A stretch of 64,000 nucleotides of DNA from Chlorokybus atmophyticus (lineage: Eukaryota > Plantae > Mesostigma and Chlorokybus algae): the NCBI GenBank assembly GCA_009103225.1, contig RHPI01002504.1, forward strand, positions 62,001 to 126,000. The letters are read 5' to 3'. The notes beneath the pieces were generated by a model, which was not told the DNA's origin, searched no databases, and was given only the letters and a program-made list of their open reading frames with translations. The translations under genes and the position numbers were made by a program. This document shows positions 24,192 to 56,839 of this stretch, piece by piece. The first letter of the stretch is position 1; every line of letters begins with the position of its first letter.

Positions 24192-26275
<2,084 letters not shown>

Positions 26276-30948: not shown

Positions 30949-33900
30949 CTAGTCTGAGACTGGAGGAGGAGGAGAGCCAGCCTCATCCTCCTGAGGGGGA
31001 GGGGAGTCTGAAGGGAGTGGTGGGGGAGGAGAACTAGCCTCAATCTCCAGAGGGGGAGGGGAGTTCGAAGGGGGTGGTGAGGGAAGTGGGCAGGACTTGC
31101 CGAGTTTGGTGTTGTAGTAGTAGCCTTGCACATCATATTGTTGCAGGGATGCAGGGTATTTTCCGCACAGGTTGGCATTGTTATGTAGGTAGCTGCACAT
31201 CATGCGCAACAACAAAGCGAGAGCGTGAGCGTGCAAGAACAAGCACGTTAGTGGCAGCACGTGACCAGGTGTTACAGCAATGTGCTTGCAATGTGTGTTG
31301 CAACTCACACTAATTGGAGGCGGTTCAGGTTGCTCAATGTGCTTGGCACTGGTCCGGAAAGCTGATTGTCGTTGAGAAACCTGTCATCACGCATGCATGC
31401 ATGTCAGCCAATGCAACACAAAGTGTACGAGTCCACATGCAATGGTATGCTGTACACCACAGCATAGATACATGTACAACTTACAATAAGCGAAGTTTGA
31501 TCCAGTTGCCCATTGTGCTCGGCAATGGTCCAGTAAACTGGTTGATACCAAACCTCCTGTGCACGCATCATAGATAAGCACGTTGTACATGTTAGCCAAG
31601 TGTCGCAGAAGCATACGAGTTCACATGCAATGTGTTGCAGCTTATATGATATGCAACACATCATAGCCACAACTCACAGCTCCTCGAGGTTGATCATGTT
31701 GCCCATTGAGCTCGGCAACGGTCCGTAAAAATGATTTCCCTGAAGGTTCCTGTGCACAAGGAACCTTCAGGGAAATGTGCACGGAACCTTCAGGGAAATG
31801 TGCACGAATGTCTGCATGTCAGAGTCTATACATGGCGGAAGCATACGAATTACATGCAGTGCTTGGCTGCAACACATTACAGCAGCTGGCAGCCACAACT
31901 TACGCAGTGCGGAGGTTGACCAGGTTGCCAAATGTGCTTGGCAACATTCCGTGCAACCCAAGGTCCTGCAAATACCTGCACGCATGTATGCACGTCAGCG
32001 ACTACCTTAAACGCAAGTGTGCCAGACCACATGCATGGCATGCCGCAGCCACTTGTAAACAGCATGCATCAACTGATCATCAGTCACAATCAAGGCAGTT
32101 CAGAAACTGAAAACAGCACACATGTTTCCACAACCCGCTTACACTTGAGTGATTCCCATTCCGTCCTGGCAAGTGATGCCAGGCAAGGTGCAGATGTTGT
32201 AGTCGGGAGATGCGCCTAGGTCAGTCCAGTTGGGGATACCGTCCACCTTGTTGCCGTTCCCATCAGTCCAAGATACGGCCGCCTGCAGGTCCTTGAGCGC
32301 CGTGAATGCCACTGGGACGACACAGAGCAGAGTGAGTGCGGCTGTTGTTGCACGCAATTGCAAGCTGCCACACTGTGGCACACTATGCAACTATTGAGGT
32401 GCGTGTACATATGTAGTAGCGTGGCGAACAACTACAACTTACAGTCCCCGGGGGACGTGGGGGAAGGTGGTGGGGCGGGGAGCGGGCAGGGGCTGCCGTT
32501 GCCGAGGCTGGTGCTGTAGTAGTAGCCTACCACATCCGGTAGTTGTAGGAATGCAGGGAAACTCCCGCACAGGTTGATGTTGTTATGTAGGTAGCTGCAC
32601 AGCACGCACGCAAACACCAGGGGAGAGCGTAAGCGTGCAAGAACAGGCACTTTGGTGGCGCGTGACCAGGTGCCTCAGGGTTACAGCATTGCTTGCAAAG
32701 TGTGTTGCGGCAACTCACACAGTTTGGACGAGGACCAAGTTGCTCAGTGAGCTCGGCAATGGTCCGGAAAGCCGGTTGTCGTTCAGAAACCTGTGCACGC
32801 ATGCATGCTTGTCAGCCCACGCATCACGAAACGTACAAGTCCGCATGCAAAGGTATGCTGCACCACAGCATAGAAGATGTACAACTCACAATAAGCGAAG
32901 TTTGCGCCAGGCGCCCATTGTGCTCGGCAACGGTCCAGTAAACTGATTGATACCAAATCTCCTGTGCACGCGTCGCACATAAGTGTAATGTACATGTTAG
33001 CCAAGACATGTCCCAGAAGCATACAAGTCCATGCAATGTTTTGCAGCATATGATATGCTGCAATGCATCATAGCCACAACTCACAGCTCCTCGAGGTTGA
33101 TCATGTTGCCCATTGTGCTCGGCAACGGCCCGTAAAAATGATTATTCTGAAGGTTCCTGTGCACGAATGTTTGCATGTTAGCGTCTATGCATGGCGGAAG
33201 CATAAAAGTGCACATGCAACGGTATGCTGCGACACGTGACAGCCGCGAGATGGACACAACTACTTACGCAGAGCGGAGGTAGACCAGCTTGCCAATTGTG
33301 CTTGGCAAAATTCCGGACAACCCAACGTCCTGCAGGTTCCTGTACGCATGTATGCACGTCAGCCACCACCATCAATGCAAGCTCTGGAGGACCACATGCA
33401 TGGCATGTCGCAACATAGCATCACAAAGTCACAAAGCAGTCCAAACAACCAAGGCGTGGCAGTTCAGAAAACAAGACCACACATATTGAACCCGCTCACA
33501 ATTCAGTGACGGATCCGTCCACGCAAGTGATGCCAGGCAGGGTGCAAACGTCGTAGCGGGGAGACATGGCTAGGTTAGGCCAGCTAGGGATTCCGGCCAC
33601 CTTGTGGCCGTTCGAATCAGTATAAGATACAGCCGCCTGCAGGTCCTTGAGCGCCGTGACTGCTTGCCACGGATGCGACAGAGAGCGTGAGTGCGACTGC
33701 ATGCCATATGGAACACATGTACATGTAGCAGAGTGGCGAATTACAACTTACACTGTGGAGATTCCTTGGCGGTTGCAGCAGACGCCCCACGGTCTGCACG
33801 CAGATAAACATGCAAGTCAGCGCTACAAGTGAAAGCGTAAGCACAGACACTTGCAGCAGAAGCAGGCAAAGGGAGACAAGCAAGCAGTTGCACTCAGTTT

Positions 33901-38568: not shown

Positions 38569-40384
38569 TTCCCCCCCACTTGGGTTTCAATGTCCTCATT
38601 GAAGGGTTTGCAAAGCCCCACCGTAAGTAAAGAAACAAAGTGGAGAACCACGGCTGAAGCGGTAAAGATGTCTGCCGTCACCCTGTTACCATTCACGTGT
38701 GGACACAGTACTCCAGTATCGCCGAAGAATTTCCTGGTAGTTGGTAAGATTCCTTTCGGGCTTCCATGTATTGTGTTCAACACCATACCCTTTTCAATTC
38801 ACTAAGTAAGACGGCGCCCGTCCGCGTCGAGGCTTACAGCGACTCGGGATTACTTCCACCATACTCAAAAGTATCGTCGCTTTCCACTGCAACGGGGGGT
38901 AGAGGAGGTTGAACTTGACCGTTAGAACGGTACGGTTTCAGTACACTCACATGAAACACATTGTGAATGCGTATCGACTTTGGCAAGTCCAAACGATACG
39001 CGTGAGTGCCGACCCGATTATTCACATTAAAAGGGCCTATTTAGTGAGGGAAGAACTTGCGGGTACCCACTCCCTTGATGGATATGTTTTTGGTGCTTAT
39101 AAGCACCGAACAGCCCACATCATACTAGGCCTCTCTACATTGTGCATGAGCATGGGCTTTTTGTCTGTGTTGCGCTGCGCGCAGACAGTCTTTTGCCAAC
39201 GCTAACCTATCTTGCATGGCCGAAGCCATTTCGCGCGCTTGCAGGCACGCGCGTTACGTCAGTAGCGGGCAACTTGATGCTGGCAGGACTCAGTGGACGC
39301 ACTCCGCAATTTAAGAAAAACGGAGTTTCCTGCACATTCTCTTGCCAGGCATTGTTAATCGCTAACTCAGCCATTGGGAGATAGATATTCCAATCACGCT
39401 GGTTTGGATGCACATAATGCCGGAAGGTTTCCAATCACTTGATTGGCACGCTTCGTCTGACCATCCGTTTGCGCATAATTGGCTGTGCTCATGTTTTGCT
39501 GAATGTGCAGGCGCGGATTGCGATCAAATACAAAGTTGCGAGGCAAGCCATGCAACTTGCACACAGACGCGACAAAAACCATTGTCAACTTACGGGAGCC
39601 TATCTCCGTGCGACAAGGGACAATGTGAATGATTTTTTATTAAACGGTCCACAAAAATTGCAATCGCAGTGTGACCTAATGCTGTCTCTAGAAGCTTATT
39701 AATACGGTCCATACTCACACTTTCCCATTTGCCATCGGAAATAGGCAAAGGTCGCGGCAACCCAGTGGGTTTCTAAGGCAACGGCTTGTCACGCTGACAT
39801 CTATTGCACGTGTCAACATATTGCTTTACGTTAACAGGCAACAATGGCCACCAATACAAATGTTGCGCTGCCTTAGTAGTCTTGCGATTGCCAAAGTGCC
39901 TAGCGTACGGTGGATCGTGTACACTGTACATGGCATTAGCTATGCATTTCACGCGCAGCTCAGCATGGCTAGGTATTACCAAGCTAGCGCCCATATAATA
40001 CAAGTTGTCTTTTACGTCAAGCTTTTGTACATTCTTTTCCATTGAAAACCATGGGTTTAAGGCATACCCATGTAAAACAGCTTGCACAAACTCATCATTG
40101 GGGAGAAATGTACCTTGCGTCGCAAGCAATTGCGCACGCATAACTGCCAACAATGATGGACAGCAACTCAGAGGATCTGCCACATTGGTCCTACCAGGCC
40201 GGTATACCCATTCAAAAGCAAATCGTAACAGAAACTCATTCCAACGAGCTTGCCTACGTGACAAGTTTAGCTGTGTTGAGAAGTACACTAATGGGTTGTG
40301 ATCAGTCACCATTGTAAACTGAACTCCCTCTAAATAACATTGCCATGGTTTACGAGCATGCACGATACCAAGCAATTCTTTCTC
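38569..40384 (-). mobile_element. Chromovirus pol 3' half, degenerate: RNase H C-terminus, integrase (H2C2 + core), chromodomain
   Basis: [18 protein letters not shown]...TDHNPL...LSRRQARW; HFGNRKT...YWW...[12 protein letters not shown]; AQTDGQTKRANQ; AYRLDLP...HNVFHVSVLKPY; YLVN*KGYGVEHNTWKPERNL (~38715-38810). Confidence 0.9.
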
Positions 40385-40806
40385 GGGTCTCGAGGAGAGT
40401 CGAGGTTCACGTTGTCTCGTACAGCTGGAAGCAAAGACATGCTTTCTGGACACGCCACGTCATTGACAGTCGGACCATGCATGGTCCAAACCTCACGTGA
40501 ATGGTCCCATGTATTTTTGGGGTCGCACCATGTCTGGTCCGGCCGGTTTACGGTCGCGTCAGGACCAGGTACGAGCCAGCCAGCGGACCAGGGACTTAAT
40601 ATATCATGCAAGTGTACTTTAAATCATTACTGGTCTGGCCAGCGGACCATCGACCGCAATATTTATTCATAAGCATCAGATGTTATTGCAAATGACGGAA
40701 AAGTGCTCTATCTGGAGCCGACGGTACCGGCCAGGCCCGGCCTGCGGGGCCGCAGGTTGCAGCGCACGAGGCCGCGGCGTCTTAGAAATGATTGGTCAAG
40801 AACACA

Positions 40807-40876: not shown

Positions 40877-41859
40877 ACGTACCGGTAAGAACAGTGTAAT
40901 ACTTGCGTTATAGACTGTACCGACGGCCGCTTGGCGACTGTCGGCGGCGGAAATTGCACAGGAAGTCGGCGTTGTGAATTGACAGGCCCATAGGCAGTGC
41001 ATGCGCTAGCAATGTGCATAGGCTGTACCAGTATTAATCAACGGTATTACGTTATTTTAGGTCATTATTGATGACACAGACAGCCGGCTGCCAAGGTTTG
41101 TAAACTATAATGCTTTGTTGGGGGCTGTCCATGAGTATGTACCCTTGTTAGGGGTTGTCAACATCCTGCTTGCGTGCGCATACATAAATCTACATGTGTA
41201 TATATGTAAGCATTTGTGTATATAGTATATATAGTATATATAGTATTCATATCATATAAACGTATATGTACGTTTACATGATATAAATGTTAAAAACCGC
41301 ATTGCGGCACCAACGTAGGTATTTACTGGCTGGTTGGACACAATGCTTGGTCGGGGCTGTCAATCATTCTGCGGTCTCATAAGAGAGCTATTATAAAAAG
41401 TGACGTTATTTAAGTATATTTTTTGTAAGTATTTTTACATGAGACATACCTTATATACGGCTCAACCTAAATATTACTGATATAAACATTCAAATCTGCG
41501 TATTGATGCGAATAAGATTAGATACATTTGTGTACACGCTAACATATATATATATATATTATATGATACATTCAATGCATTGACCTATACACATGTATAA
41601 TGTTCATATATATCCGTAGCTAGACTTTAATAAACGCATAGAACATGTTAATGGTGCATGTCCACAAAGTTTTGCAAATACACTTACGGTACTATGAAGT
41701 ACAATCAGCCGCCGGCTATCCACTTGCGGCTGTCCACGGGTGTATCGCCGAGAGTCGGTGCGGCTTGTCAACACGTTAAGTGCGCTTGTGCAATCAGGCA
41801 TTTAGGCAATCTATTGTACCTTAGGTAGGTTGGTGCTACCTACTCATGATAGCGGCAGG

Positions 41860-42207
41860 GCCGCGGTCACTGGTCCGTGCTGCACCGTACATAATGCGGC
41901 GCGGACCGAGCGGCACCATGTACGGTGCGTGTAGTAGGGCCACAGGACTGCGGGACCGCATGTGGTCCGCATTCCAGGGCCAGCGTACATTACTGGTCCG
42001 TGCCGCACCATGGATGGTGCGGCACGGACCATGCGTAGTGCGCGTCGCCGCGCCAGCCATGCACGGGCCGCGGGGCCCCGCCCTACCCTAACCCCAACCC
42101 GAATGGACCAGGAACGGTCCGTCCCCCGCGGACCAGGCAGTCCTGGCCCGCGGGGTACGGATTATGCATGGTCCGCGGGGTCCGTGAAAGGACCATGCAT
42201 GGTCCTT
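41860..42207. repeat. GC-rich hairpin/palindrome-rich insertion with short telomere-like tract
   Basis: 17-bp perfect stem 41994-42010/42015-42031; 20-bp palindrome 42188-42207; 11-bp inverted repeat 41882-41892/41918-41928; CCCTACCCTAACCCCAACCCGAA at 42081-42103; many GGACC/GGTCC units. Confidence 0.7.
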
Positions 42208-42289
42208 CAACGTCAAGCCGTGTGAGGCCCTTGTTACAGCCATCGCAGAGCATCATAAGCGAGTCGTTGTCGGCGCTGCAGCGCTCGCA
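42208..42289 (-). pseudogene. Truncated PHD finger at the integrase C-terminus
   Basis: CERCSADNDSLMMLCDGCNKG followed by HT in a shifted frame (C4-H half of C4HC3); the rest is cut off by the 41860-42207 insertion. Confidence 0.7.
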
Positions 42290-45200
42290 ACCCGTGCTGC
42301 GGGCGGGGCGAGGGTTTTTAATGCGCCAGAACCCTGCTACGTAAGGGAGGTGACATGGCGCGCAGTTCACCATGTTGTCCTTCAACCTCTCGCCGTTCTG
42401 GCCTAGGAGGTTCAGTACCCCCTTGGGGTACACCTTGAGCACCGTGAAGTCTCTGCGGGGAACAGAGGTGTCGAGCGCGTCGTTAGTGGCCTCCATGCAG
42501 TAGGCGAAGTCTCCTGCTTGAAACCGGCGTTGGCACTCCCCATGGAAGCCACTGCACATGCGCTCATAGCGTACCGTGTCGCGGTGCTGCGCGATGCGCA
42601 AGTTGTTGAAGGACATAGGGACTGTACGCTCAAATAGTGCTGTGCGCGTGATAATGCCATAGTGCATCCAGTCGGGGTCGTCGAGGTTGTTCACCATGCG
42701 ATCCACCTCTCGCTGTGCACGGATAGGAAGCAGCGACGATCGCCCGAACAATAGATAGTACGGGCTATACTCGCACAGAGCTGCCTGTTTTGACAGTCAG
42801 TATCCAAGAGCCACCCATGGGAGGTGGTCATCCCAGGTGTTTTTTTCGTACTCCAGCACATACTTGCGGAGTGCCTTCTTTATGGTCTGCACCGTGTGCT
42901 TGGCGAGACCGTTAGCTTGGGGGTGGTCACGCGAGGTACGGCGATGGTCGATGTAGCACCTGTCTAAGAGAGTGACGAACTCCCCTCTGAACTTAAGGCC
43001 TTGGTTCTCAATGCCTTGGACATGAGAGAGGAAGGCTTGAGCCAGCCCCTTATGGCTCTTGTCGGGTAGTGGCACCAGCTCCACCCACTTGGAGAAGTGC
43101 TCGATTATCACCAGGATGCAACGGTTGCTGCGTGCCGAGGGTGGTAAGTCTCTCAAGATGTCAAGTCCCCATCGGTAGAATAGGCCGGAGATGGGAAGAG
43201 GGTGTAATGTGGCGCTGCGCGTGTTAAGGCTGGCGCGCACCATGTTACATTGTTGACAGTGACTCACGAACTCTTGCACCTGCTTGTACAACCCATGCCA
43301 CCAATAAGTGTGCCCTCACAAGGCTGATTGTGCGCTTGACACCAAAGTGTCCAAGCTCAGTGTGGCGGGCTGTGATGATGCCTTCGGGTGTGGCCGGGTT
43401 CGGCACCTCTTTGTCTTTACCATAGAGGCGACGATACAGCTTGTCATGCGCTAAGCGGTACTACTGGGTGCGCTGGTTGACGCGGTCTTGCTCATGCGCT
43501 CATACCGGAGGGAAGCTGACCACTTTGAAGGAAGGAGAGGGATGGCTTGTCCATCCGTATGTCCTGCCTGGTGTCGGTGCGTGCCAGCTCTGTGTCATCG
43601 ACATCAATGTTGCCACCGTGAGTGGTCCCTGCGGGTGTGGAGGTCGTGGAGCCGGTGGACTCAGGAGCAGGTACCTCTTCAGTTGTTGTTGAGGCACCGA
43701 CGTTGGTCTTGCGCCCTGCGCGCAACGCGGCGATAGCAAAAATGGCAGCCACGGTCGGAGCTAATGATGCAAGGCCAAGCTTATGCCGAGCTGTAGTTGT
43801 ATCGTTGGTGCTCATGTGGGGGTTACGATTGAGTCCATCGGCGATTTCATTGGCGAGGCCTGCGGTGGTCAATCTTGAAGTCATACTCCTGTAAAAGCAA
43901 GGCCCAACGGGCAAGTTTCCCTGTTAAATGTTGGTTGGTCATCAACCACTTGTGTGGCTGATAATTGGTGATCAACTAAAATTGGCGGCCGAAGAGGCAG
44001 GGTCGGAAGAAGGAGATAGCCCACACTGCAGCGAGACACTCTCCTTTGTTACCGCTGTAGTTGGCCTTGGCACTGTTGTTGCTCCGGCTGGCGTACGACA
44101 CCACCCGCTCCGTCTTGCTCTCAGCGTGCTGCACCGGCACGGCTCCCATCCCGAGCTTGCTCCAATCGATGTGAAGGATGAAAGCCTTGGTGTAATTAGG
44201 GCGTTGAAGGATGGGTGCTGTGGTGACCTTGCTTTTTAGCTCCTCGGAAGCCTGCTGTTGCGGCTCCTTCCACACGAACTCCACTTCTTTGTTCAGTAGC
44301 TCGTTGAGGGGTCACGCTATCTTTGCGAAGTCCTTCACGAACCGGTAATGGTAGTTGGCAAGGCCCAAGAAGGCGCGTGAGGTTTGTTGGAGCAGGGATT
44401 GCTGCAAGGGCCTCCACCTTTGCCTGCTGTACGTACACACCGTGGGGCACAACCATGTGTTATAAAGAGGGTACCTTATGAGTGAAGAAGGTGCACTTGT
44501 CGGGTGCACAGTCATCCCCACTCCCTTGAGCCTCTCCAGCACCTCCTCGATGTCATGTGGGTGCTCTTCAATGCTGCGGCTGAAAATGAGGATGATTGTC
44601 GATGTAGCACCGCGCAAAGTCCAGCCCCTTCAAGGCTTTGTCCATCATGCGCTAAAACTTGGCGAGGGCATTCTTCAGCCCGAACGGCATTGCCTTCCGC
44701 TGGTACAACTGTCGGTTGCCTCAGAAGGAAGTTTTGTGCTTGTCCTCGTCCTTGATGGCGATTTGGGTGTACCCTTGGCGCCTATCGAGGATGCTGAAGA
44801 TCGTGCAGTCTCCTACATCGTCAAAAATGCCCTCTGCTGTAGGCATTGGGTACCTATCTTGTTTGGTCTTGTTGTTGAGGGGACGGTAGTCGCCGCACAT
44901 GCGCCGTTCTGTCCAGTTGCCTGCCGAATCCTTTTTCAGGGGCATAACGGTCGCGGCTGCAAAGTTTGATGTGAACTTCTCAATAAGGCATGCGTCCAGC
45001 AGCGCCTTACACCTCTATTCCATCATATCCTCCTCTAGCTTGGAGAGCCTATATTGCCGTCGAAACACTGGCTCAGTGTCCACCAATTCGATGTCCATCT
45101 TGTACACTGAACATGTACGCAGCTCCTTTACGTTAAGGCTGAATTGGCTCCTCCACTTGGTGAGGAGAGCCTCTAGCTTCTCTCCTGTATCCTCCGTTGC

Positions 45201-45389
45201 AAGAGGGCTAATGGCGTGGTCCCAAGACGTTGCGCTGGCAACCACTGGGATGTCTTCCACTGTCACTGCTGCTTGCTCCTCCATGTGAACCACCTCGAGG
45301 GCTGTGTGAGCTGCCTTGATGTCTGCAATATGAGCCCACCCCCCAGCCAGGTGTTTGAAATCCTCAAAAGACACATGGCAGCCCTGCAA

Positions 45390-46354
45390 CGCGAAGCTTA
45401 TCTCCAGCAGCCGGACCATGCTGTTTTGATCCATGGCGCGACCGAGCAGCTGAGATTGCTGAATGTCGGTCAGCGGGGACCCTGTGATATGTTGGGAAAA
45501 AACCCCATGGCGCGTTTGTGCTCACGTGCGTAGGGTTCTTCCAGCCCGCCCGTTGTGGTGTCGAACACCATGCCATCGCCGCTATTGCGGAAGGCATAGG
45601 ACCCTGGGTAGGACACCTACGTGGGAAGTGCGCTGCGCGGTTGACCAGGTTGGTTGCATTTGTAGAAGTGGATGTGGTCAAGACGTGTAACAGGTTGAGC
45701 TCTATGGTTGCGGTCGAGGATGTCATTAACCAAGAGGTTGCGTGGCCGTGTACTCCGCGTGTACTCTGCTGTCATCAGTTTTTCCGTGGTGGCCAGATTT
45801 GTCCACTTCGCACGGACGCGATGTGCACGGGAACCATGGCGCGTTCCGTTCACCTTGAGTGGATGCCCAAGCACAGAGCACACTTCCCTGTAGGTGGAGG
45901 CTACATGGGGACGCTGGCCAACTTCTAAGTGCACGTTTTCCATGATGTACCCTAGTGGCCTAAAGATCTGATGATGTTGGAGGAGGTGGATGCCTCTCAT
46001 CAACTCCCAAAACAGACATGAGCGAGGGTCGTCAAGGCCTTGGCCTTTTCTTGCCCTGAAGTAGCCTTGGCACTCCCATCCAGCTATTAACAAGTCGATG
46101 TTGCCAAGGGACAGCAAGTGGTCCTCTGTGATTAGTCGGATGGCTTGTGGCAATACTTTGATGATGCCTTGCAGTGCCGACGAGGGTAGTTGTTGTGGAT
46201 AGCGTCCGTGCACTTTACGCAGATGGTGCTTAAGGGATGTTTGAACGCGTGGATTAGGGTTGCAATAATAATACTTGGTGGCTTTGACGCCTGTATTGAG
46301 GACTGCAGCGAGACCACTGCCGATGCCTCCGAACAGTTCAAACACCGTGATGCG
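45390..46354 (-). pseudogene. C5 cytosine DNA methyltransferase domain within the retrotransposon pol (one nonsense codon, one frameshift)
   Basis: Motif I ITVFELFGGIG; IV DLLIAGWECQG (Cys codon 46070-46072); VI YIMENV (ENV 45932-45940); VIII RAHRVRAKW; IX EEPYAREHKRAMGF; X QLLGRAMD. TAG at 45617-45619, frameshift near 45478. Confidence 0.92.
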
Positions 46355-49300
46355 TTGCTGCCGCCGAAAGGTAGGTATGGAACTCTACGACTCCGGTGGC
46401 TACCATGTGCTGGTCTTGCATCATGTCGTGTCCCTTGTGGTGGTGGAAGCGCGAAGTGATCAGCGGCTGGGTCAGCAAGAGGTGTGCGTCCATCTGTGCC
46501 CGCTAACGGCGTTCAGCTGGGTCTTGTAATGCCACCTCCACCGTGGCATCCTTCGGCTCCTCAGTGTCAGGGATGGGAACGGCGTTGTCTGTGCGGCAAG
46601 GGGCTGCGGCGACGGCAGTGACTCTTGTGCGGTTGCTGTCATATGTGGCTGATGCCGTCTTCTGTGTGCGCACATGATTGCGCGTGGCTGTGGCAGCCAC
46701 TTTGCATTGGGCACGCGCGCGCGACACCAAGTCCAGAGGCAAAAAGCCCTGTACCTTTTCATCCCAATGTGGTCGGAACCATGCTCGCTCTGTCCAGCAG
46801 TCAAGGCCCATACCCACGGGGAAGTTGAAGTCTTGTCCAAGCAGGAAATCAACGGAGCTAGCATTGGTGACAACGCATTGATGAACGGTCTTTATGGTGT
46901 GGGTCGGGTCAAGCCCTTTCAACCGGATGCAGAAGGCCTCCTTGGTGACCCCGATCACCTTGTCACCACTCCCCATTGCTGTGTCCAATACGTATGGGCA
47001 GGGCATCAGGTCCAAACAAGTGATGCCAAGGGATCGCGCAAGGAAGCGCCTGATGATGAATCGCTGTGCACCGGTCCAACAGCATTTGCTTGGGTGCCAG
47101 GCCGTTGATGGTCACATGCTTGTTTTGGTTGGCTACCATGGCAGCGTTGGCGTTGATGTGTAGCCTCTGGGTGCGGGCTGTTGGCACTGGTGCCTCATGT
47201 CTCTAAGCTAAAGGTACAGCGCGCATCGCAACCAAAGCTCCTATGCCTGCTGGGTCTTGACTACCGCCTCGTTGTCCTCTCCCTCTGCTAAATCGACCTT
47301 GTCGTGGTGGTTGGTGGTACACGGGGAGGCCTTTGCACTAAGGGTTCCGGCGCTGGCTGTGGTAGAGGTGATGGTGGATGCCGCATTTGAAAGGATGGAA
47401 TTATGCCTGCCGGCTTCCCCAATGGTTGTGGAGGGAAGCCTGGCAGACCCGGTGTTTGCGGGCCTGTCTCGCGTTTTGCTTGCTTTGCGGCGTAGGTCCA
47501 TCGAACAGCATGAGCTGCCTCTCTAACCAATGTCCCTTCCCACGTGGTTGTGGGCTCTGTGTCCACATCGGTCTAGTGGTAATATTTTGGCATGGGCTGC
47601 CGGTATACTGTGCGCAGTAACTGCTGCTGCATGTTGTGAGTGACGGTGGGGACTCGCAAGATCCCTGCCATGTAGGCATCCCACCTGCCTTGTACCACGC
47701 CCACATCGAGCACGGTCATGGTGTGCGCTCGTATGGTGCGTAGGAGGTCGGTCTGCTGCGCATGTAGCTTGTGAGCAATAGCGATGCACCGACGTTGCCG
47801 CGATGCTTCTACTCCCGGCAGCCGCAGCATTGCCCCATGCACTCCCTCCAGAGTGTCTGGCGCGGTGATGGCAGCTTCATCGTATGCTTGCCGCAGCGAG
47901 GGTACAAATGCCCCCAACCATGATGCTCTGTCGCCAAAGGCGAATCTGGGGACAACGGGGTGATTGGCGACGAGCCACGTCACGAGTCGTGCTCGAGAGG
48001 CGCTGCCTTCTCGCATCCCCATTATCTGTCTCAATGCACTGCCCTCAGGCCGGTGCAGCATGAGTGCTTGCCGAATGAGAGCGGTACGAAGTTGTTGTTC
48101 TCCTACCATACCAGCTCCTCCTCGCTGGGTGGAATTTCCTTGTGGGGTGAGGTAACCTTGCCCTGCATCCCGCTGATCGTCGGGCATACCATCGATTAAA
48201 GGGGGCAGTAGCGGCGCGATTACCCCCTAATTGTTGCGCCAACGCCCTCGCTTGGTCAGCAACAATTGCTTGCCCTGGCTGGGTGACTCTGGTTGGTGCC
48301 GGTTGTACCACGGCAAGCGCAGTGGAGGTGCCAGCGACATCTGACGGTCTTGCGAGTTGCACCGCAGCGGCGCGTACTGCTTCGTACGCTTGTCGGCGTG
48401 CGTCAATTTGCACGGCTTGATCTGGTCGAGAGCGGTGTGTCTGTTCAAGAGAAAAGCACCGTTTTTGGTGACTTCCCGGTGTGAGTCCACTAAGTGCCGG
48501 GTCAGTGCCCGGCGACATGTTGGAGGTGGTCACCACGAGGTCCTGCATTTGGCAATGCTGAAGTCCAAGCAGGTCCAGCGGTAAAGGCTCAAAGTCAATT
48601 TGTTGCGCTGGCATGGGCTGTCGCTATCGGTTGGGTGCGGTCTGCAGCCTTGCGCGCAATGTTAAAAAAAACTAAGTTGCCAGCTCCAACACAGCGGGGC
48701 GTCGGTATTTGGACCAAAAGAGACGATCTCTCATTTTAGAAGCAGTGCCAGCTAAAATCTCATCTTCCAACTGTCATTGGGTGGGCTCTGGCAGTGTATG
48801 ATATTCGAGCAGTAGTAGCGGCATGATGCGATCACCTCGCGCTACGTGTGTCGTGCGTTGCCCCCCGAATCCGTACGCAATGGTGGTGGGCTCGATGTTG
48901 CGTAGGACGGACACCTAAGCGCGCTCTGCTTGCGGTCCGCGTGGCACTTGTTGAGTGTAATCAAGGTGCGGAGGAGGGGCCGCACGAACCCCTGATGGTG
49001 CGGCGGCATTGGCAGCTGGGGGTGACAGAGGTGCGGCAATATTAACTGCAGCAACAGTCGTGGCACCTGCAACAGTCATTGTGACGAAGGTTGCCGCTTT
49101 GAGCGTTGCAGCAGTCGGGACTGGGGCCGTGTCCGCAGTTGTAGCGGATGTGGTGCCAACACCACCAATGGGTACGCCAGCCATGGCAGCAGCCTCAGTG
49201 CCGGTCATCTCTGGCACCAACGTGGTGCTGGGTGTATCCGCGCTGGCGGCACCTGTGGGTGTTGTCATCGGCGGTGTCGTCGATGGGGTCGTCCCAGCAA

Positions 49301-49399
49301 GGGTTGTGGCCACCGAGCCAGCCCCACTTGTGGCCTTCAGCGACGCTGTTGTTAATGCGCCTGCCTCTCTGCGCGCACGTCTCAATGGTTGAACACACC

Positions 49400-49935
49400 A
49401 TGCAGGGGGGGGGGGTCTCGTTCACGTTTGGTGCCATTAAGGCCCATCGGGCAGCGTAGCAGGCTTGGTAGTTTTGCTCCTTGTTATCTTCCAGCTAGGC
49501 CACTCGTGCCATGAGGGCCGCGACTTGGTCGACAGCTTGTGAACTGGTTGCTCTGACAACAGCAGCTCCAATGTGAGGGCGTCCCTCAGGTCCCTTGCGC
49601 TGTGGAGGGCGGTTCTTCCCTCTGTAGCCAGTCTCCTCGTTTTGAGCGCCGGCGTGATTGTTGTTGGGGTTGTGGCCACCAGCGTTGTTGACGTTGTTGC
49701 CATTGTTGTGACCACCAGCGTTGTTGCTTTTGGTGTAGCCACCAATGTTGCTGTTGGTGTAGCCCCCGTGGTTGTTGTTGTTGTTATTGTTGTTGTTACT
49801 GACATAGCCACCAGCGTTGTTGCTGATGTTGTAGCCAATAGAGGGCCGCAGCTCGTGGAACTTGAGCCAGCATACTGCCTCCAAGTGTCCCGTCTTGTGG
49901 CAGTAGTCGCACACAAGCGTCACCAATTTGAGGAT
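49400..49935 (-). mobile_element. gag-like fragment with CCHC zinc knuckle and Asn/Gly-rich repeats
   Basis: CDYCHKTGHLEAVC followed by NNAGG/NNHGG repeats. Confidence 0.55.
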
Positions 49936-50643
49936 GCGTGGATTCAACACGGATAACCACATTACATCCACACCACCCATAAATACAATGCGGAGCGATA
50001 GCAACGCAACATATATTTCATACAAAATCAATAAGTGTTAAGTAATGCTGTAACTTGCATTGCATATTGATTACATATCACATTCACATAGCATCAAATA
50101 CCTACAGCATGTGTAGAATTGATATTGATCACTGTTGCTTGACACATGCCTTGCAGTATCCGCATTGACTTGTTAAGCAATTAATGCCAATCAATGTGGT
50201 CAACTTTGATTAATATGGCAACTTCTACAATTGATGACATTCATATTGATATCAATAATCGTAATAATATATAAATTTTATTAGATTATGACTGGCGTTG
50301 TGCGCTGCGGGTGGTGGCGGCCTGATCTGATCCGGAGGAGGCTACTGTAGCACTTAGACGGCATTGCCAACTTAGGCAGGATGAATGTTGGTTTGAGCAA
50401 TAATTTGTGCAGTGGTCACTGCCGACCTCAGGCTGTAATTACATTCAATAATAGGCCCGTGAAGTTACATTTTGGTACTCAACTAGTACATGGTTAGCAT
50501 GGTAAATGACAGAGGAAGAATTCCTTGTATACAGAGGAAGCCGTCAAGCTTGTCATGCGTTTGCAAGCAATATGCTAGCAGCAAACCAAGTTAAGGAATA
50601 TCACTACCTTGCTCTAGCCACTAAACTTAATGGCGGAAGTTGT

Positions 50644-53250: not shown

Positions 53251-54081
53251 TGGGCGTGCTCATACAGTTGTTGCGATGGTGAAAGTGTATGAAGGGTAGA
53301 GTGTTTGTGCTCTACACGGTTATCTCATTGCTACTACCACTCACCGCACTAGTGCTTGTGCGCAGTATGTGATGACAGTGATAATAATGCACGATGATGT
53401 ATCCCACTGCAAGCTGCACTTTTGGTGTGCAGGATGCAACCACACTCATTTTAGCAAAGAGGGTAACACTGTGAGTCAACAAGCCACTACTAAAGGTAGT
53501 GCTGTTTACACGGGTCGTTGCATGAGTGGAAAATGTGTTACACTATTAAGTGGTGAATGAGCAAGCAACACGTGAATGCTATGCCCTGACTAATGCCAAC
53601 AAGCACACCGCGATCCAGCACACCAAGCTCACAGCAATAACAAGCACGGTGCACACGAGCATGCACAGACTTTCACACGGTGAGGGGATTCTTGGTAACC
53701 AGGATAGCGTGTTTGTAGTTCAAGTCGCTTCACACAAGCTCCTAGCTTTCTCACTGACAGTGTCACCAGCTGATCCGGTGAACACCGCGACTACATGTAC
53801 AAGTTAAATTATCATGACTGTTCAGAACACAAGCTAACGATCATATAAGGGCTATTCCCACAAGAAACTCCCCTTCGATATAGAACATAATGTATAACTG
53901 ACTTCACAAGTGAAACAGCTACGCGCGGTGCCTATGTAGACTACGGTCATGAGCTAGTCCAAGGTCATGATCTAGCTACTCGTCAGTGACGCGCGCGGGT
54001 TGGTATGCTGATAGTCCGAGCGAGGGTCTTGATGTGAGCATGCCCGATGTAGGCTAGCACACGAGGACAATTGGCATGGCA

Positions 54082-56839
54082 TCTTGCTCAATGGTAGTGT
54101 AGTTCACCTCTGCTGGGATGAATTTCCTACTCGCATAAGCACATGGTCTGCCATTTTGCAACAATACTGCACTACATCAAAGGGTGGAGGCATTGCTCAC
54201 CACAGTGAAGTGTTTATCCTAATTTGGCAATGCCAACACTGATGCCGAAAAGTCAAGGCCAACTTCACTTGTTGCATAGCAGCTTCTTGTGCTGCTGTCC
54301 AAGAGAATGGGGCATCCTTACGCAACAATTTAGTTAGAGGCACCACAACTGTAGAGTACCCCATCAGAAAACTTGCGAGAATAGTTTGCCAACCCTAAAA
54401 ATGACCGCAACTACTGGATATTCTCGGGTTGAGGCCATTCTTCAACCACTTGCACTTTGCGAGGGTTAGGTTTAACACCCTCCCCACTGACAATATGCCC
54501 TAAGATTGGCAACTCAATCTTGCAAACGTCACACTTTGACTAGTTGGCATAAGCGGTGTGTTTGCAATAAAGCAAACACCGCTTTCAGATGCCTTCTGTG
54601 CTCTTCTTTTATTTTACTGAAGACAATCATGTTATCTAAGTAAACCATAACATGCTTTCCAAGAATGTTACTAAAATCTTATTCATTTCCTTTTTAAACA
54701 CCGCAGGTGCATTTTTCAATCCAACAATAGTACTTTGTATTGATAATGGCCTGAGGGTGTTCTAAATGCCGTTTTGTGGACATCAGAAGGGTGAATACGG
54801 ATTTGATGATACCCACTTGTCAAATCTAGCGTATTGAAATACGCATTACCCGACAGCTTTTCAAACACATCAACAACCCGCAATAGCGGGTATTGATGTT
54901 TTATCGTGATCTTGTTCAAAGCACGATAATCCATCCACACACATGCGCAATTTCCCACTCTTTTTCATCACAAACAAGATGGGTGCGCCAAAGGGTGAAG
55001 AACTTAGTTCAATCAATCCCTTTTCCAACAACTCTCTGATTTGTGTTTCCATTTCCTCCCTCTCATTGGGGCTTAGCCTATATATTGGCCGAAACAGGGG
55101 TTTACCATCAGGAATAACCGGATTGTGTGTCCAACACCTCGATCATGGTGTAAGTCTGGCAACTCATCTCAGAATATGTTTTGATACTGATGAATGATGT
55201 CTGCAACACCTTCCGTACTGCCTGGCACAAAGTCGTCAAACGACGTTAAGTGCACCAGAAAAACCGGTGTGTTTTTACGCAATGCACGCTTCACTTGCAG
55301 TGCAGTGAGAAGCGCGGGGTCAGTTTGCTTATGTTCCAAGCTATGTGACCCTATCACAGACAATATTACACTCTTACGGCCCTTCTTCACTGTGCAATCG
55401 TGCGCCGGTATCCAATGTCATTTCGACATTATCCTGCCATTCTTGTCCTAGCACCACATCAACACCAACTATGTTAATGGACACTATTACAAAAGTTAGG
55501 TTGGCATAATAACTACCAATCTTTACTTTCGTTTTGATTTCTCCTTTCATTGGCAACGCTCCCCCAGCATCGGCAGCTGAAAATGCTGAGGGTTTGCACA
55601 TTATTTTATTGCGCACAACCCATTGTTCCCCAATAAAGTTGTGTGTCGCATCAGTGTCAATCAAGATCGAACTATTTACAACCTGCATTGTGCCATTGAA
55701 TGTCCACAACAAAGGTACCACTCGTCCTTGAACAGTAGCCAAGAGTCCGTGACTAATGCGGGGGTTGATCAAAAAAGCTGACAATCGTACTAACCTTGTT
55801 TCACGCTTGCTGAATTGTTACAACACAGTAACCCCCCGTGTGCTTGCTTTCACCATAAGCCATGATACTTTGGCACTATTACCACCATACTCAAGGTTTT
55901 GTGCTTGTTTTGCAAGTAAGTCAATGCATGCAACACGTCAGTAAGCATGTTGAATTTCACAAGTACCAGTACACAAGCATTTCCTTCCACTTTTTCAACA
56001 ATCAAAAGTGGCAGCTTGTCATATGCTTGCCATGCATGTGTCATTACATGCACTTGGGACAGATCATTATCCAAGTTTACTGCCTGCATCTCAAGCAACT
56101 GGCTATCAACCACTTTTGTATCAGTCTCGGCGTAATCGTATTCAGCTTTCTTGGCCTTGCCCTTCGCCTTGTTTGGGCAGATTTTTGCAATGTGGCCCGG
56201 CTGACGGCACATGAAACAGTTGCGAGCCGCAGCAGGCGCGACACCACTTGTAGCACCTGTGTGGGGCATATAAGTCTTCGGCTTCTTTGCCGCGTGCACA
56301 CTCAGTTGAGGGTAATGCTTGCCTCCCACTCCATGCGGCTTAGCCGCAGCTGCTATATGTGATTTTTTCTGCATCGCCATGTCGTCATTGTACATGTATG
56401 CACTCAGCTTCTGCAATGTGGCCAAGTCGGTAGGAACCCAAGGCATTCCCGTTGCCGTGTTGTACTGCAGCTGATTGCGCACCCGCGCATCTAAGCCGCG
56501 CTTGTACAACTCAAGCTGCTCGGCCTTATCCATGAGCATCAGGCCACTGTTGGCGCAACCCACCAATGTCTGAAACTCTTGCAGATACATGAAGCGGCCC
56601 GACCCACCTGTTGCAACTTGCTGAGCTTGTTGCGAGCATGAGTAGCCGAGTCCATGCCACCATAGCGTTCCACCAGAAACTGATACAGTGCTTCTACTGT
56701 CTTTAAAGCACCATCATCTGTCTGTCTCGCCCATTCGGTGAGTGCGTCAGACGGCATAAGCAACTCAGCAATAGCAATGTGCTCACCAACCGGGCGTCTT
56801 AATGCTATTAAATAGTGCTTTACGGTCACCACCTCGTCG
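54082..56839 (-). mobile_element. Chromovirus gag-pol 5' half, degenerate: gag (CCHC), protease, RT, RNase H N-terminus
   Basis: CFMCRQPGHIAKIC; ILIDTDATHNFI; IYRLSP...IELSSSPFGAPILFV.KKSGKLRMCV/DYRALN...DLTSGYHQIRI...KTAFRTP.GHY; GRPCAYASRKFIPAEVNYTTIEQ. Confidence 0.9.

What the first reader, a model, noticed from the sequence alone, without database searches (positions are those of the whole stretch)
42208..47190. Ty3/Gypsy retrotransposon encoding its own C5 DNA methyltransferase inside pol
Seen in sequence: DNMT motifs I, IV, VI, VIII, IX and X in canonical order, intronless, between the aspartic protease and RT. Motif X (LLGRAMD) runs in one reading frame into the RT N-terminus (ORF 45434-45015), so the DNMT is part of the polyprotein rather than a later insertion. 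Established: DNMT capture by retrotransposons has been reported in charophytes and dinoflagellates (de Mendoza et al. 2018), where retrotransposon DNMTs were shown to methylate CG de novo. Possibly new: the host lineage, the WECQ variant of the PCQ motif and the PHD tail. Inference: the element methylates its own cDNA. This copy is dead (one stop, frameshifts).
Basis: partly seen in the sequence, partly recalled or inferred. Interest (0 to 1): 0.9.

Follow-up and report, generated by a model that had tools for sequence, protein, structure and literature searches.

The report
Dead algal Gypsy retrotransposon carrying DNMT3
This is a broken copy of a jumping gene that carries its own DNA-methylating enzyme; the family was described in 2018 in another streptophyte alga, so the locus is real but adds a new host, not a new kind.

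Summary
On the minus strand, 47190-42227 reads protease, C5 DNA methyltransferase, RT, RNase H, integrase and half a PHD finger. It is collinear at 40-45% identity with intact single-ORF polyproteins of relatives. The DNMT passes Pfam PF00145 and keeps motifs I, IV, VI, VIII, IX and X in order. Motif X runs in frame into the RT N-terminus.

It is a member of the published KnitGypsy-Dnmt3 family (de Mendoza 2018). A Klebsormidium nitens contig has the same order, and its DNMT and RT group with this copy. This scan already flagged other copies on other DNA of this genome, which earlier notes call Chlorokybus.

Corrections:
- The copy has at least 8 in-frame stops and at least 4 frameshifts, not one stop.
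- Only the first half of the PHD finger is left.
- The "WECQ" motif is the family consensus, not a local oddity.
- De novo CG methylation was shown only for the dinoflagellate DIRS enzymes. The Klebsormidium Gypsy DNMT showed no activity in yeast, which the authors called inconclusive.

Added here: relatives carry the DNMT at two positions. It lies between PR and RT in streptophyte algae and between RNase H and integrase in chlorophytes. The two groups are sisters in both the DNMT and RT trees, which suggests one capture and one relocation.

Verdict: new member of a known kind.

The parts
46764..47190 (-). Aspartic protease, with a frameshift exactly at the active-site motif (MLLD 47085-47074 in one frame, TGAQ... 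from 47075 in another).
   Evidence: tblastn of intact relatives: P0191 676-779, P0189, P0050, P0014, P0111 and Mesostigma P0302 all map to 47075-46764. Motif coordinates.
46349..46763 (-). Poorly conserved linker between protease and DNMT.
   Evidence: No similarity to relatives. The same linker is 7-30% identical among intact relatives.
45429..46348 (-). DNMT3-like C5 cytosine methyltransferase domain with motifs I-X in order. One in-frame stop (45617-45619) and one frameshift (about 45473-45500).
   Evidence: PF00145 at 31.6 bits against a cutoff of 22. 43% identity to the P0191 DNMT over 304 aa. PDB hits are all DNMT3A/B/C. Motif coordinates.
45105..45428 (-). DNMT-RT linker, in the same frame as motif X and the RT N-terminus.
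   Evidence: ORF 45015-45434 and its upstream open frame. Aligned with P0191 1260-1390.
44300..45104 (-). Reverse transcriptase with several in-frame stops and a frameshift that splits the YIDD motif at about 44598.
   Evidence: tblastn to P0191 1238-1624 and 1550-1796. Weak RVT_1 hit on ORF 44721-44945.
43862..44284 (-). RNase H domain of Gypsy type.
   Evidence: PF17919 at 4e-28 and PF17917 at 1e-17 on ORF 43976-44284. tblastn.
42560..43487 (-). Integrase: H2C2 zinc-binding part (43487-43314, another frame) and DDE core, with a stop at 42797.
   Evidence: tblastn to P0191 1953-2321 at 45% identity, and to P0182, P0050 and P0179 for the zinc-binding part.
42227..42289 (-). First half of a PHD finger (C-x2-C...C-x2-C). 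The second half is absent.
   Evidence: Aligned with the complete C4HC3 finger of P0191, 2300-2344. Relatives carry PF00628.
47191..50100 (-). Possible 5' part of the element (gag region with a CCHC knuckle at 49911-49870 and low-complexity runs). Assignment uncertain.
   Evidence: Same GC block (0.55-0.57) as the pol, against flanks of 0.46. Multi-copy contigs reach at least 48000. No similarity to the gag of relatives. The CCHC lies about 930 codons before the protease, against 170-600 in relatives.

Best explanation
Window 47190-42227 (minus strand) is an old, inactivated copy of a Ty3/Gypsy LTR-type retrotransposon. It belongs to the Gypsy-DNMT3 lineage first described as KnitGypsy-Dnmt3 in Klebsormidium nitens. 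Its pol polyprotein reads protease, DNMT3-like C5 methyltransferase, RT, RNase H, DDE integrase and PHD finger.

Shown here:
- The DNMT is an inherited, integral pol domain.
- The domain order is the one found in streptophyte-algal relatives.
- The domain is of DNMT3 type and keeps the catalytic Cys, ENV and RxR residues.
- The copy is dead and truncated in the PHD finger.

Inferred:
- In live family members the DNMT is made as part of pol and stays next to RT.
- There it methylates cytosines de novo on the element's new DNA copy, or at the integration site.
- This would give the new insertion a host-like methylation state.

I put about 0.9 on the identity and about 0.45 on this mechanism. The confidence figure given for this explanation is for the identity.
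For: - Pfam hit above the gathering score.
- Collinear tblastn to intact polyproteins P0191 and P0189 at 40-45% identity across PR, DNMT, RT, RH, INT and PHD. Both are single uninterrupted ORFs on their contigs.
- K. nitens contig DF238327.1 carries CCHC plus DNMT followed by RT-RH-INT. Its DNMT (GAQ93235.1) falls on the window's side of the DNMT tree, and its RT falls in the window's clade.
- The family profile hits DNMT3A/3C/3B at E 1e-24, ahead of DRM (1e-14) and M.HhaI (1e-11).
- The AlphaFold model of a relative's domain has pLDDT 95.7. Its 50 best Foldseek matches are all DNMT3A/B/C.
- DNMT identity among intact relatives is 41-48%, close to RT (48-53%) and INT (45-55%). Linkers are 7-27%.
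- In an RT-seeded scan, every relative with RT at 40% identity or more and enough flank carries the DNMT.
- Two sequencing runs hold exact pieces of this locus plus hundreds of contigs at 85-95% identity, including over the DNMT. The family is therefore multi-copy in the organism.
Against: - No terminal repeats or target-site duplication could be found for this copy.
- No gag similarity was found, so the element's ends are not defined.
- Enzymatic activity of this class has never been shown. The K. nitens domain was inactive in yeast, called inconclusive.
- The Pro of the Pro-Cys catalytic dipeptide is Glu in most members.
- The organism name rests on earlier notes of the scan. I could not confirm it myself.
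Confidence: 0.88

Rival explanations
1. The DNMT is a host gene or another element that landed inside a Gypsy copy (a nested or chimeric locus), not part of the element.
For: The copy is heavily damaged, and the window is a pile of TE fragments: a second Gypsy RH-INT at 38834-40468 and a third RT at 53997-55109.
Against: The same order and spacing occur in one uninterrupted ORF in P0191, P0189, P0050, P0178-P0182 and others. They also occur in K. nitens, Closterium and Mesostigma. Motif X and the RT N-terminus share a frame here.
Confidence: 0.02
2. The domain is conserved but no longer works as a DNA methyltransferase. With Glu in place of the catalytic-loop Pro, it would serve as a DNA- or chromatin-binding, tethering or regulatory module of pol, or act on RNA.
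For: Glu-Cys replaces Pro-Cys in 70% of RH-DNMT-INT members and 94% of PR-DNMT-RT members. KnitGypsy-Dnmt3 showed no methylation in yeast.
Against: The catalytic Cys is invariant, and the motif VI Glu and the two motif VIII Arg are invariant in the 35-row alignment. The FxGxG SAM motif is near-invariant. Pro-Cys and Glu-Cys members coexist in one conserved family, K. nitens among them. The yeast result was called inconclusive because human DNMT3B also failed. The model is a complete DNMT3 fold.
Confidence: 0.2
3. The two positions of the DNMT in pol (PR-DNMT-RT and RH-DNMT-INT) reflect two independent captures of similar DNMT3 genes by sister Gypsy lineages, not one capture followed by a move.
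For: The two architectures sit on opposite sides of one branch in the DNMT tree (SH-aLRT 94). No cellular DNMT3 outgroup was available to test whether they are each other's closest relatives.
Against: Both share the derived GW[E/P]CQ motif IV and a long conserved target-recognition stretch that does not align with DNMT3A. In the RT-RH tree, rooted on DNMT-less Gypsy elements, all DNMT carriers form one clade (SH-aLRT 96). No DNMT-less member with adequate flank lies inside it.
Confidence: 0.2

Closest known systems
KnitGypsy-Dnmt3 of Klebsormidium nitens (de Mendoza et al. 2018, PMC5890265)
   Same: Ty3/Gypsy backbone with an intronless DNMT3-like domain inside pol. Same order, gag(CCHC)-PR-DNMT-RT-RH-INT. 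Same side of the DNMT tree and same RT clade. The host is a streptophyte alga.
   Different: Different host genus. The sampled K. nitens copy has FPCQ in motif IV where this copy and most relatives have WECQ. The published A...B-A-B repeat layout could not be found in this truncated copy. This copy is dead.
Chlorophyte Gypsy elements with RT-RH-DNMT-INT-PHD (proteins of Scenedesmus, Haematococcus, Monoraphidium, Chromochloris and many metagenome contigs)
   Same: Sister clade in both the RT-RH and DNMT trees. Same GW[E/P]CQ motif, same target-recognition stretch, and a PHD finger after the integrase.
   Different: The DNMT sits between RNase H and integrase, not between protease and RT. I found no paper describing this arrangement.
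SymbioDIRS-Dnmt3 of Symbiodinium (same 2018 paper)
   Same: A DNMT3-type domain captured into the pol of a retrotransposon. Two domain orders coexist there too.
   Different: DIRS elements use a tyrosine recombinase, so this is an unrelated backbone and an independent capture. These are the only retrotransposon DNMTs with shown de novo CG activity.
Cellular DNMT3A/3B/3C
   Same: Best sequence and fold match: E 1e-24, TM 0.82 normalised to the target. The motif X context, LLGR, resembles that of DNMT3A.
   Different: No PWWP or ADD domains. Motif IV is GWECQ against SPCN. The target-recognition stretch is different and longer.

Membership tests
Gypsy-DNMT3 retrotransposons (KnitGypsy-Dnmt3 type) | Ty3/Gypsy pol order PR-RT-RH-INT with a DDE integrase | tested here: met
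   Pfam RT_RNaseH_2 at 4e-28. Collinear tblastn to intact polyproteins.
Gypsy-DNMT3 retrotransposons (KnitGypsy-Dnmt3 type) | Intronless C5-MTase domain inside the pol reading frame | tested here: met
   Motif X and the RT N-terminus share one frame here. Relatives have single ORFs of 2072-2374 aa.
Gypsy-DNMT3 retrotransposons (KnitGypsy-Dnmt3 type) | DNMT at the same position as in the K. nitens element | tested here: met
   K. nitens DF238327.1 has CCHC plus DNMT, then RT-RH-INT. The window has PR, DNMT, then RT.
Gypsy-DNMT3 retrotransposons (KnitGypsy-Dnmt3 type) | DNMT and RT group with the K. nitens element in trees | tested here: met
   In the DNMT tree the window and GAQ93235.1 sit on the same side of the 94% branch. 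In the RT-RH tree both are in the PR-DNMT-RT clade (SH-aLRT 88), inside the clade of all DNMT carriers (96).
Gypsy-DNMT3 retrotransposons (KnitGypsy-Dnmt3 type) | DNMT of DNMT3 type | tested here: met
   Profile against PDB: DNMT3A/B/C at E 1e-24. Foldseek top 50 are all DNMT3.
Gypsy-DNMT3 retrotransposons (KnitGypsy-Dnmt3 type) | Split direct repeats A...B-A-B in place of paired LTRs | tested here: inconclusive
   No direct repeats of any layout lie around this copy. It is truncated at the 3' end and its 5' end is undefined. Relative L005 does have permuted repeats.
Gypsy-DNMT3 retrotransposons (KnitGypsy-Dnmt3 type) | DNA methyltransferase activity | not testable with these tools
   The published yeast test of the K. 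nitens domain was negative and called inconclusive.
C5 cytosine DNA methyltransferase (PF00145) | Profile score above the curated cutoff | tested here: met
   31.6 bits against 22.
C5 cytosine DNA methyltransferase (PF00145) | Motifs I, IV (Cys), VI (ENV), VIII (RxR), IX and X in canonical order | tested here: met
   Coordinates. Column statistics.
C5 cytosine DNA methyltransferase (PF00145) | Pro-Cys dipeptide in motif IV | tested here: not met
   Glu-Cys here and in most relatives: E in 94% of PR-DNMT-RT members and 70% of RH-DNMT-INT members, Cys in 100%.
PHD finger (C4HC3, PF00628) | Eight zinc ligands C4-H-C3 | tested here: not met
   Only the first four Cys are present (42289-42227). Relatives have the full finger.

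The most novel reading that the evidence does not exclude
The Gypsy-DNMT3 lineage is not a Klebsormidium-lineage acquisition. It is one capture shared by streptophyte algae (Chlorokybus, Mesostigma, Klebsormidium, Closterium) and chlorophytes (Scenedesmus, Haematococcus, Monoraphidium, Chromochloris). After the capture the DNMT moved once within pol, between the PR|RT junction and the RH|INT junction. The enzyme has kept a non-canonical Glu-Cys catalytic motif under purifying selection. That would make it an old, pan-green 'self-methylating' retrotransposon clade with a movable epigenetic module.
Probability: 0.55. Interest if true: 0.55.

Novelty: new member of a known kind. Interest (0 to 1): 0.35.

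Why it matters
The locus itself is a dead copy of a published kind of element, and the scan has flagged other copies in the same genome. Its value is as a data point. It puts the DNMT-carrying Gypsy lineage in one of the earliest-branching streptophyte algae. With the relatives found here, it suggests the lineage spans the green algae and has carried its methyltransferase at two different places in pol. That gives a natural experiment for asking what a retrotransposon gains from encoding a DNA methyltransferase. It also supplies natural intact Glu-Cys and Pro-Cys enzymes for the activity test that failed for the Klebsormidium domain in 2018.

Tried and rejected
- Terminal repeats: the repeat finder over 36-56 kb and self-BLAST at word size 7 found no LTRs and no A...B-A-B repeats.
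- Gag: tblastn with the N-terminal parts of eleven relatives, including Mesostigma and K. nitens, found nothing upstream of the protease. Pfam found nothing on ORF 47573-48187 and only a sub-threshold zinc-finger hit on ORF 49495-50031.
- Organism identity: an exact look-up of the DNMT ORF found no record, and run names were coded. The name Chlorokybus rests on earlier notes only.
- Domain order of the published K. nitens element: neither the paper's text nor its supplements state it. I settled it from the K. nitens contig instead.
- Read depth: it is lower over the DNMT than over RT-INT, but the tool states that contig depth cannot rank parts. A single contig that skips 45569-46621 has only 22 letters on one side. 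Neither is used as evidence.
- CpG observed/expected: 0.76 in the element against 0.78 in the whole window, which is not informative.
- Rfam on 41-51 kb: no match.
- Protein Atlas: it says only 'C5 methylase'. Its nearest clusters are phage proteins by language-model features, which I do not read as ancestry.
- Outgroups: none of cellular DNMT3 were available, because the one representative search lists only the best 150 hits.
Full report
**What is there**

The minus strand of 47190-42227 carries the remains of one pol gene.
- Three-frame translation and the ORF list show a protease, a methyltransferase-like ORF (45617-46345), RT pieces, an RNase H ORF, an integrase ORF and a Cys-rich tail.
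- Pfam scores the 242-aa ORF as DNA_methylase PF00145 at 31.6 bits (cutoff 22). It scores ORF 43976-44284 as RT_RNaseH_2 at 4e-28.
- The six DNMT motifs lie in canonical order at 46342-45429.
- Motif X (45449-45429) is in the same open frame as the RT N-terminus (45104-45078).

**Is the DNMT part of the element?**

Yes.
- A full HMMER search of 1.84 billion representatives with the DNMT ORF gave 1073 hits, 77 of them below 1e-30. Most long hits are retrotransposon polyproteins.
- The intact 2358-aa ORF P0191 and the 2352-aa ORF P0189 align collinearly with the window at 40-45% identity. The matches are PR at 47075-46764, DNMT at 46348-45473, linker plus RT at 45500-44370, RT-RH at 44593-43862 and INT-PHD at 43306-42227. 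Both are single uninterrupted genes on their contigs.
- Among intact relatives the DNMT is 41-48% identical. RT is 48-53% and integrase 45-55%, while linkers are 7-27% and gag 16-28%. The domain is therefore kept by selection like the core enzymes.
- An RT-seeded scan of metagenome contigs does not depend on the DNMT. It gave 79 loci. Every locus with RT at 40% identity or more and enough flank carries a DNMT. Gypsy elements at 36% or less do not, with one exception that does.

**What kind of DNMT?**

- The single ORF hits only DNMT3A/B/C in the PDB.
- A 35-sequence family profile hits DNMT3A/3C/3B at 1e-24, plant DRM at 1e-14 and M.HhaI at 1e-11.
- An AlphaFold model of the domain of P0191 has mean pLDDT 95.7. 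Its 50 best Foldseek matches are all DNMT3A/B/C, at E about 1e-20 and TM 0.82 normalised to the target.
- The 'WECQ' motif is not peculiar to this copy. Across 185 relatives the Cys is invariant. Trp is at 91-94%. Glu is at 70% (RH-DNMT-INT elements) and 94% (PR-DNMT-RT elements). A minority has Pro, including the K. nitens copy with FPCQ.

**Which family?**

- One hit, P0154, is GAQ93235.1 of Klebsormidium nitens. Its contig DF238327.1 encodes CCHC plus DNMT, followed by RT-RH-integrase. That is the order seen here, and this is the species in which KnitGypsy-Dnmt3 was described.
- Other named hosts with this order are four Closterium strains and Mesostigma viride.
- A second, larger group of relatives has RT-RH-DNMT-INT-PHD. 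Its named hosts are Scenedesmus, Haematococcus, Monoraphidium and Chromochloris.
- In the DNMT tree the two architectures lie on opposite sides of one branch (SH-aLRT 94), with the window on the PR-DNMT-RT side.
- The RT-RH tree was rooted on DNMT-less Gypsy elements from the RT-seeded scan. All DNMT carriers form one clade (96). The RH-DNMT-INT group is a clade (100). The PR-DNMT-RT group, with the window and K. nitens, is its sister (88).
- The simplest reading is one capture and one move within pol. Two captures are not excluded, because I had no cellular DNMT3 outgroup.
- I found no paper that describes the chlorophyte arrangement or names Chlorokybus with such an element. A 2026 preprint still refers to 'streptophytes (Gypsy-DNMT3)'.

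**State of this copy**

- It is more damaged than stated. There are in-frame stops at 45617, 45015, 44721, 44652, 44460, 44312, 43976 and 42797.
- Frameshifts lie at the protease active-site motif (47074/47075), at about 45480, at the RT YIDD motif (about 44598) and between 43860 and 43310.
- The PHD finger stops after its fourth Cys at 42227. What follows is a 370-bp cluster of GGACC/GGTCC palindromes that relatives do not have.
- No terminal repeats were found, and no gag similarity.
- The GC-rich block runs from about 42.0 to 50.1 kb. That is close to the 8.26-kb unit of relative L004, so the 5' part may be present but unrecognisable.
- Contigs of two public runs hold exact pieces of this locus. 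They also hold hundreds of contigs at 85-95% identity, some over the DNMT, so the family is multi-copy in the organism.
- The scan has already noted such elements on other DNA of this genome, with 25 notes. Those notes name the genome Chlorokybus. I could not verify the name independently.

**Mechanism**

- Shown: the domain is inherited with pol, conserved, of DNMT3 fold, and keeps its catalytic residues.
- Inferred: it methylates the element's new DNA copy or its integration site.
In yeast, only the SymbioDIRS-Dnmt3 domains made 5mC. The KnitGypsy-Dnmt3 domain did not, and the authors call this inconclusive because human DNMT3B also failed.
- I give self-methylation about 0.45. I give a non-catalytic or altered role about 0.2.

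**Verdict**

The finding is real and correctly read in outline. It is a dead member of a known family in a new host genus, so its interest is moderate to low. The family-level pattern is the part worth following up: two DNMT positions, a sister relation in both trees, and a conserved Glu-Cys motif.

Noticed in passing
window 41845-42210 and 40470-40600: Two clusters of GGACC/GGTCC-rich palindromes. The exact 16-mer GGACCATGCATGGTCC occurs at 42190-42205 and 40472-40487 (3 matches allowing 2 mismatches, against 0.05 expected by chance). They bracket an AT-rich stretch of about 1.25 kb. They sit exactly where the DNMT element's PHD finger breaks off and where a second Gypsy fragment begins. This may be a small insertion of about 1.75 kb with subterminal repeats.
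   Followed up: partly
window 38834-40468 (-) and 53997-55109 (-): Fragments of two other Gypsy elements with no DNMT: RNase H-integrase at 38834-40468 and RT at 53997-55109. Both are about 25% identical to the DNMT family.
   Followed up: partly
window 25129-26124: A perfect (TC)498 dinucleotide array that ends at an N (26125), so probably at an assembly gap.
   Followed up: partly
L004 1-18357 (ENA metagenome contig ctg159469_5x_c): An intact PR-DNMT-RT element is assembled as 2.2 head-to-tail units of 8262 bp at 99.8% identity. Only 1185 bp of non-coding DNA lies between successive pol ORFs, and there is no internal repeat. This could be a tandem array, a circle or an assembly artefact.
   Followed up: partly
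L005 8590-9940 and 17146-18801: An intact relative has permuted flanking repeats, with segments A and B in different order on the two sides of the ORF. This recalls the published A...B-A-B layout.
   Followed up: no
proteins P0011, P0031, P0039, P0121, P0216, P0277 and about 160 more: A large group of Gypsy elements has the DNMT between RNase H and integrase, with a PHD finger at the end. Some also carry a G-patch domain. The named hosts are all Chlorophyceae. I found no description of this arrangement in the searchable literature.
   Followed up: partly
window 31097-31757 and 32499-33164: A direct repeat of about 670 bp at 83% identity, 1.4 kb apart.
   Followed up: no
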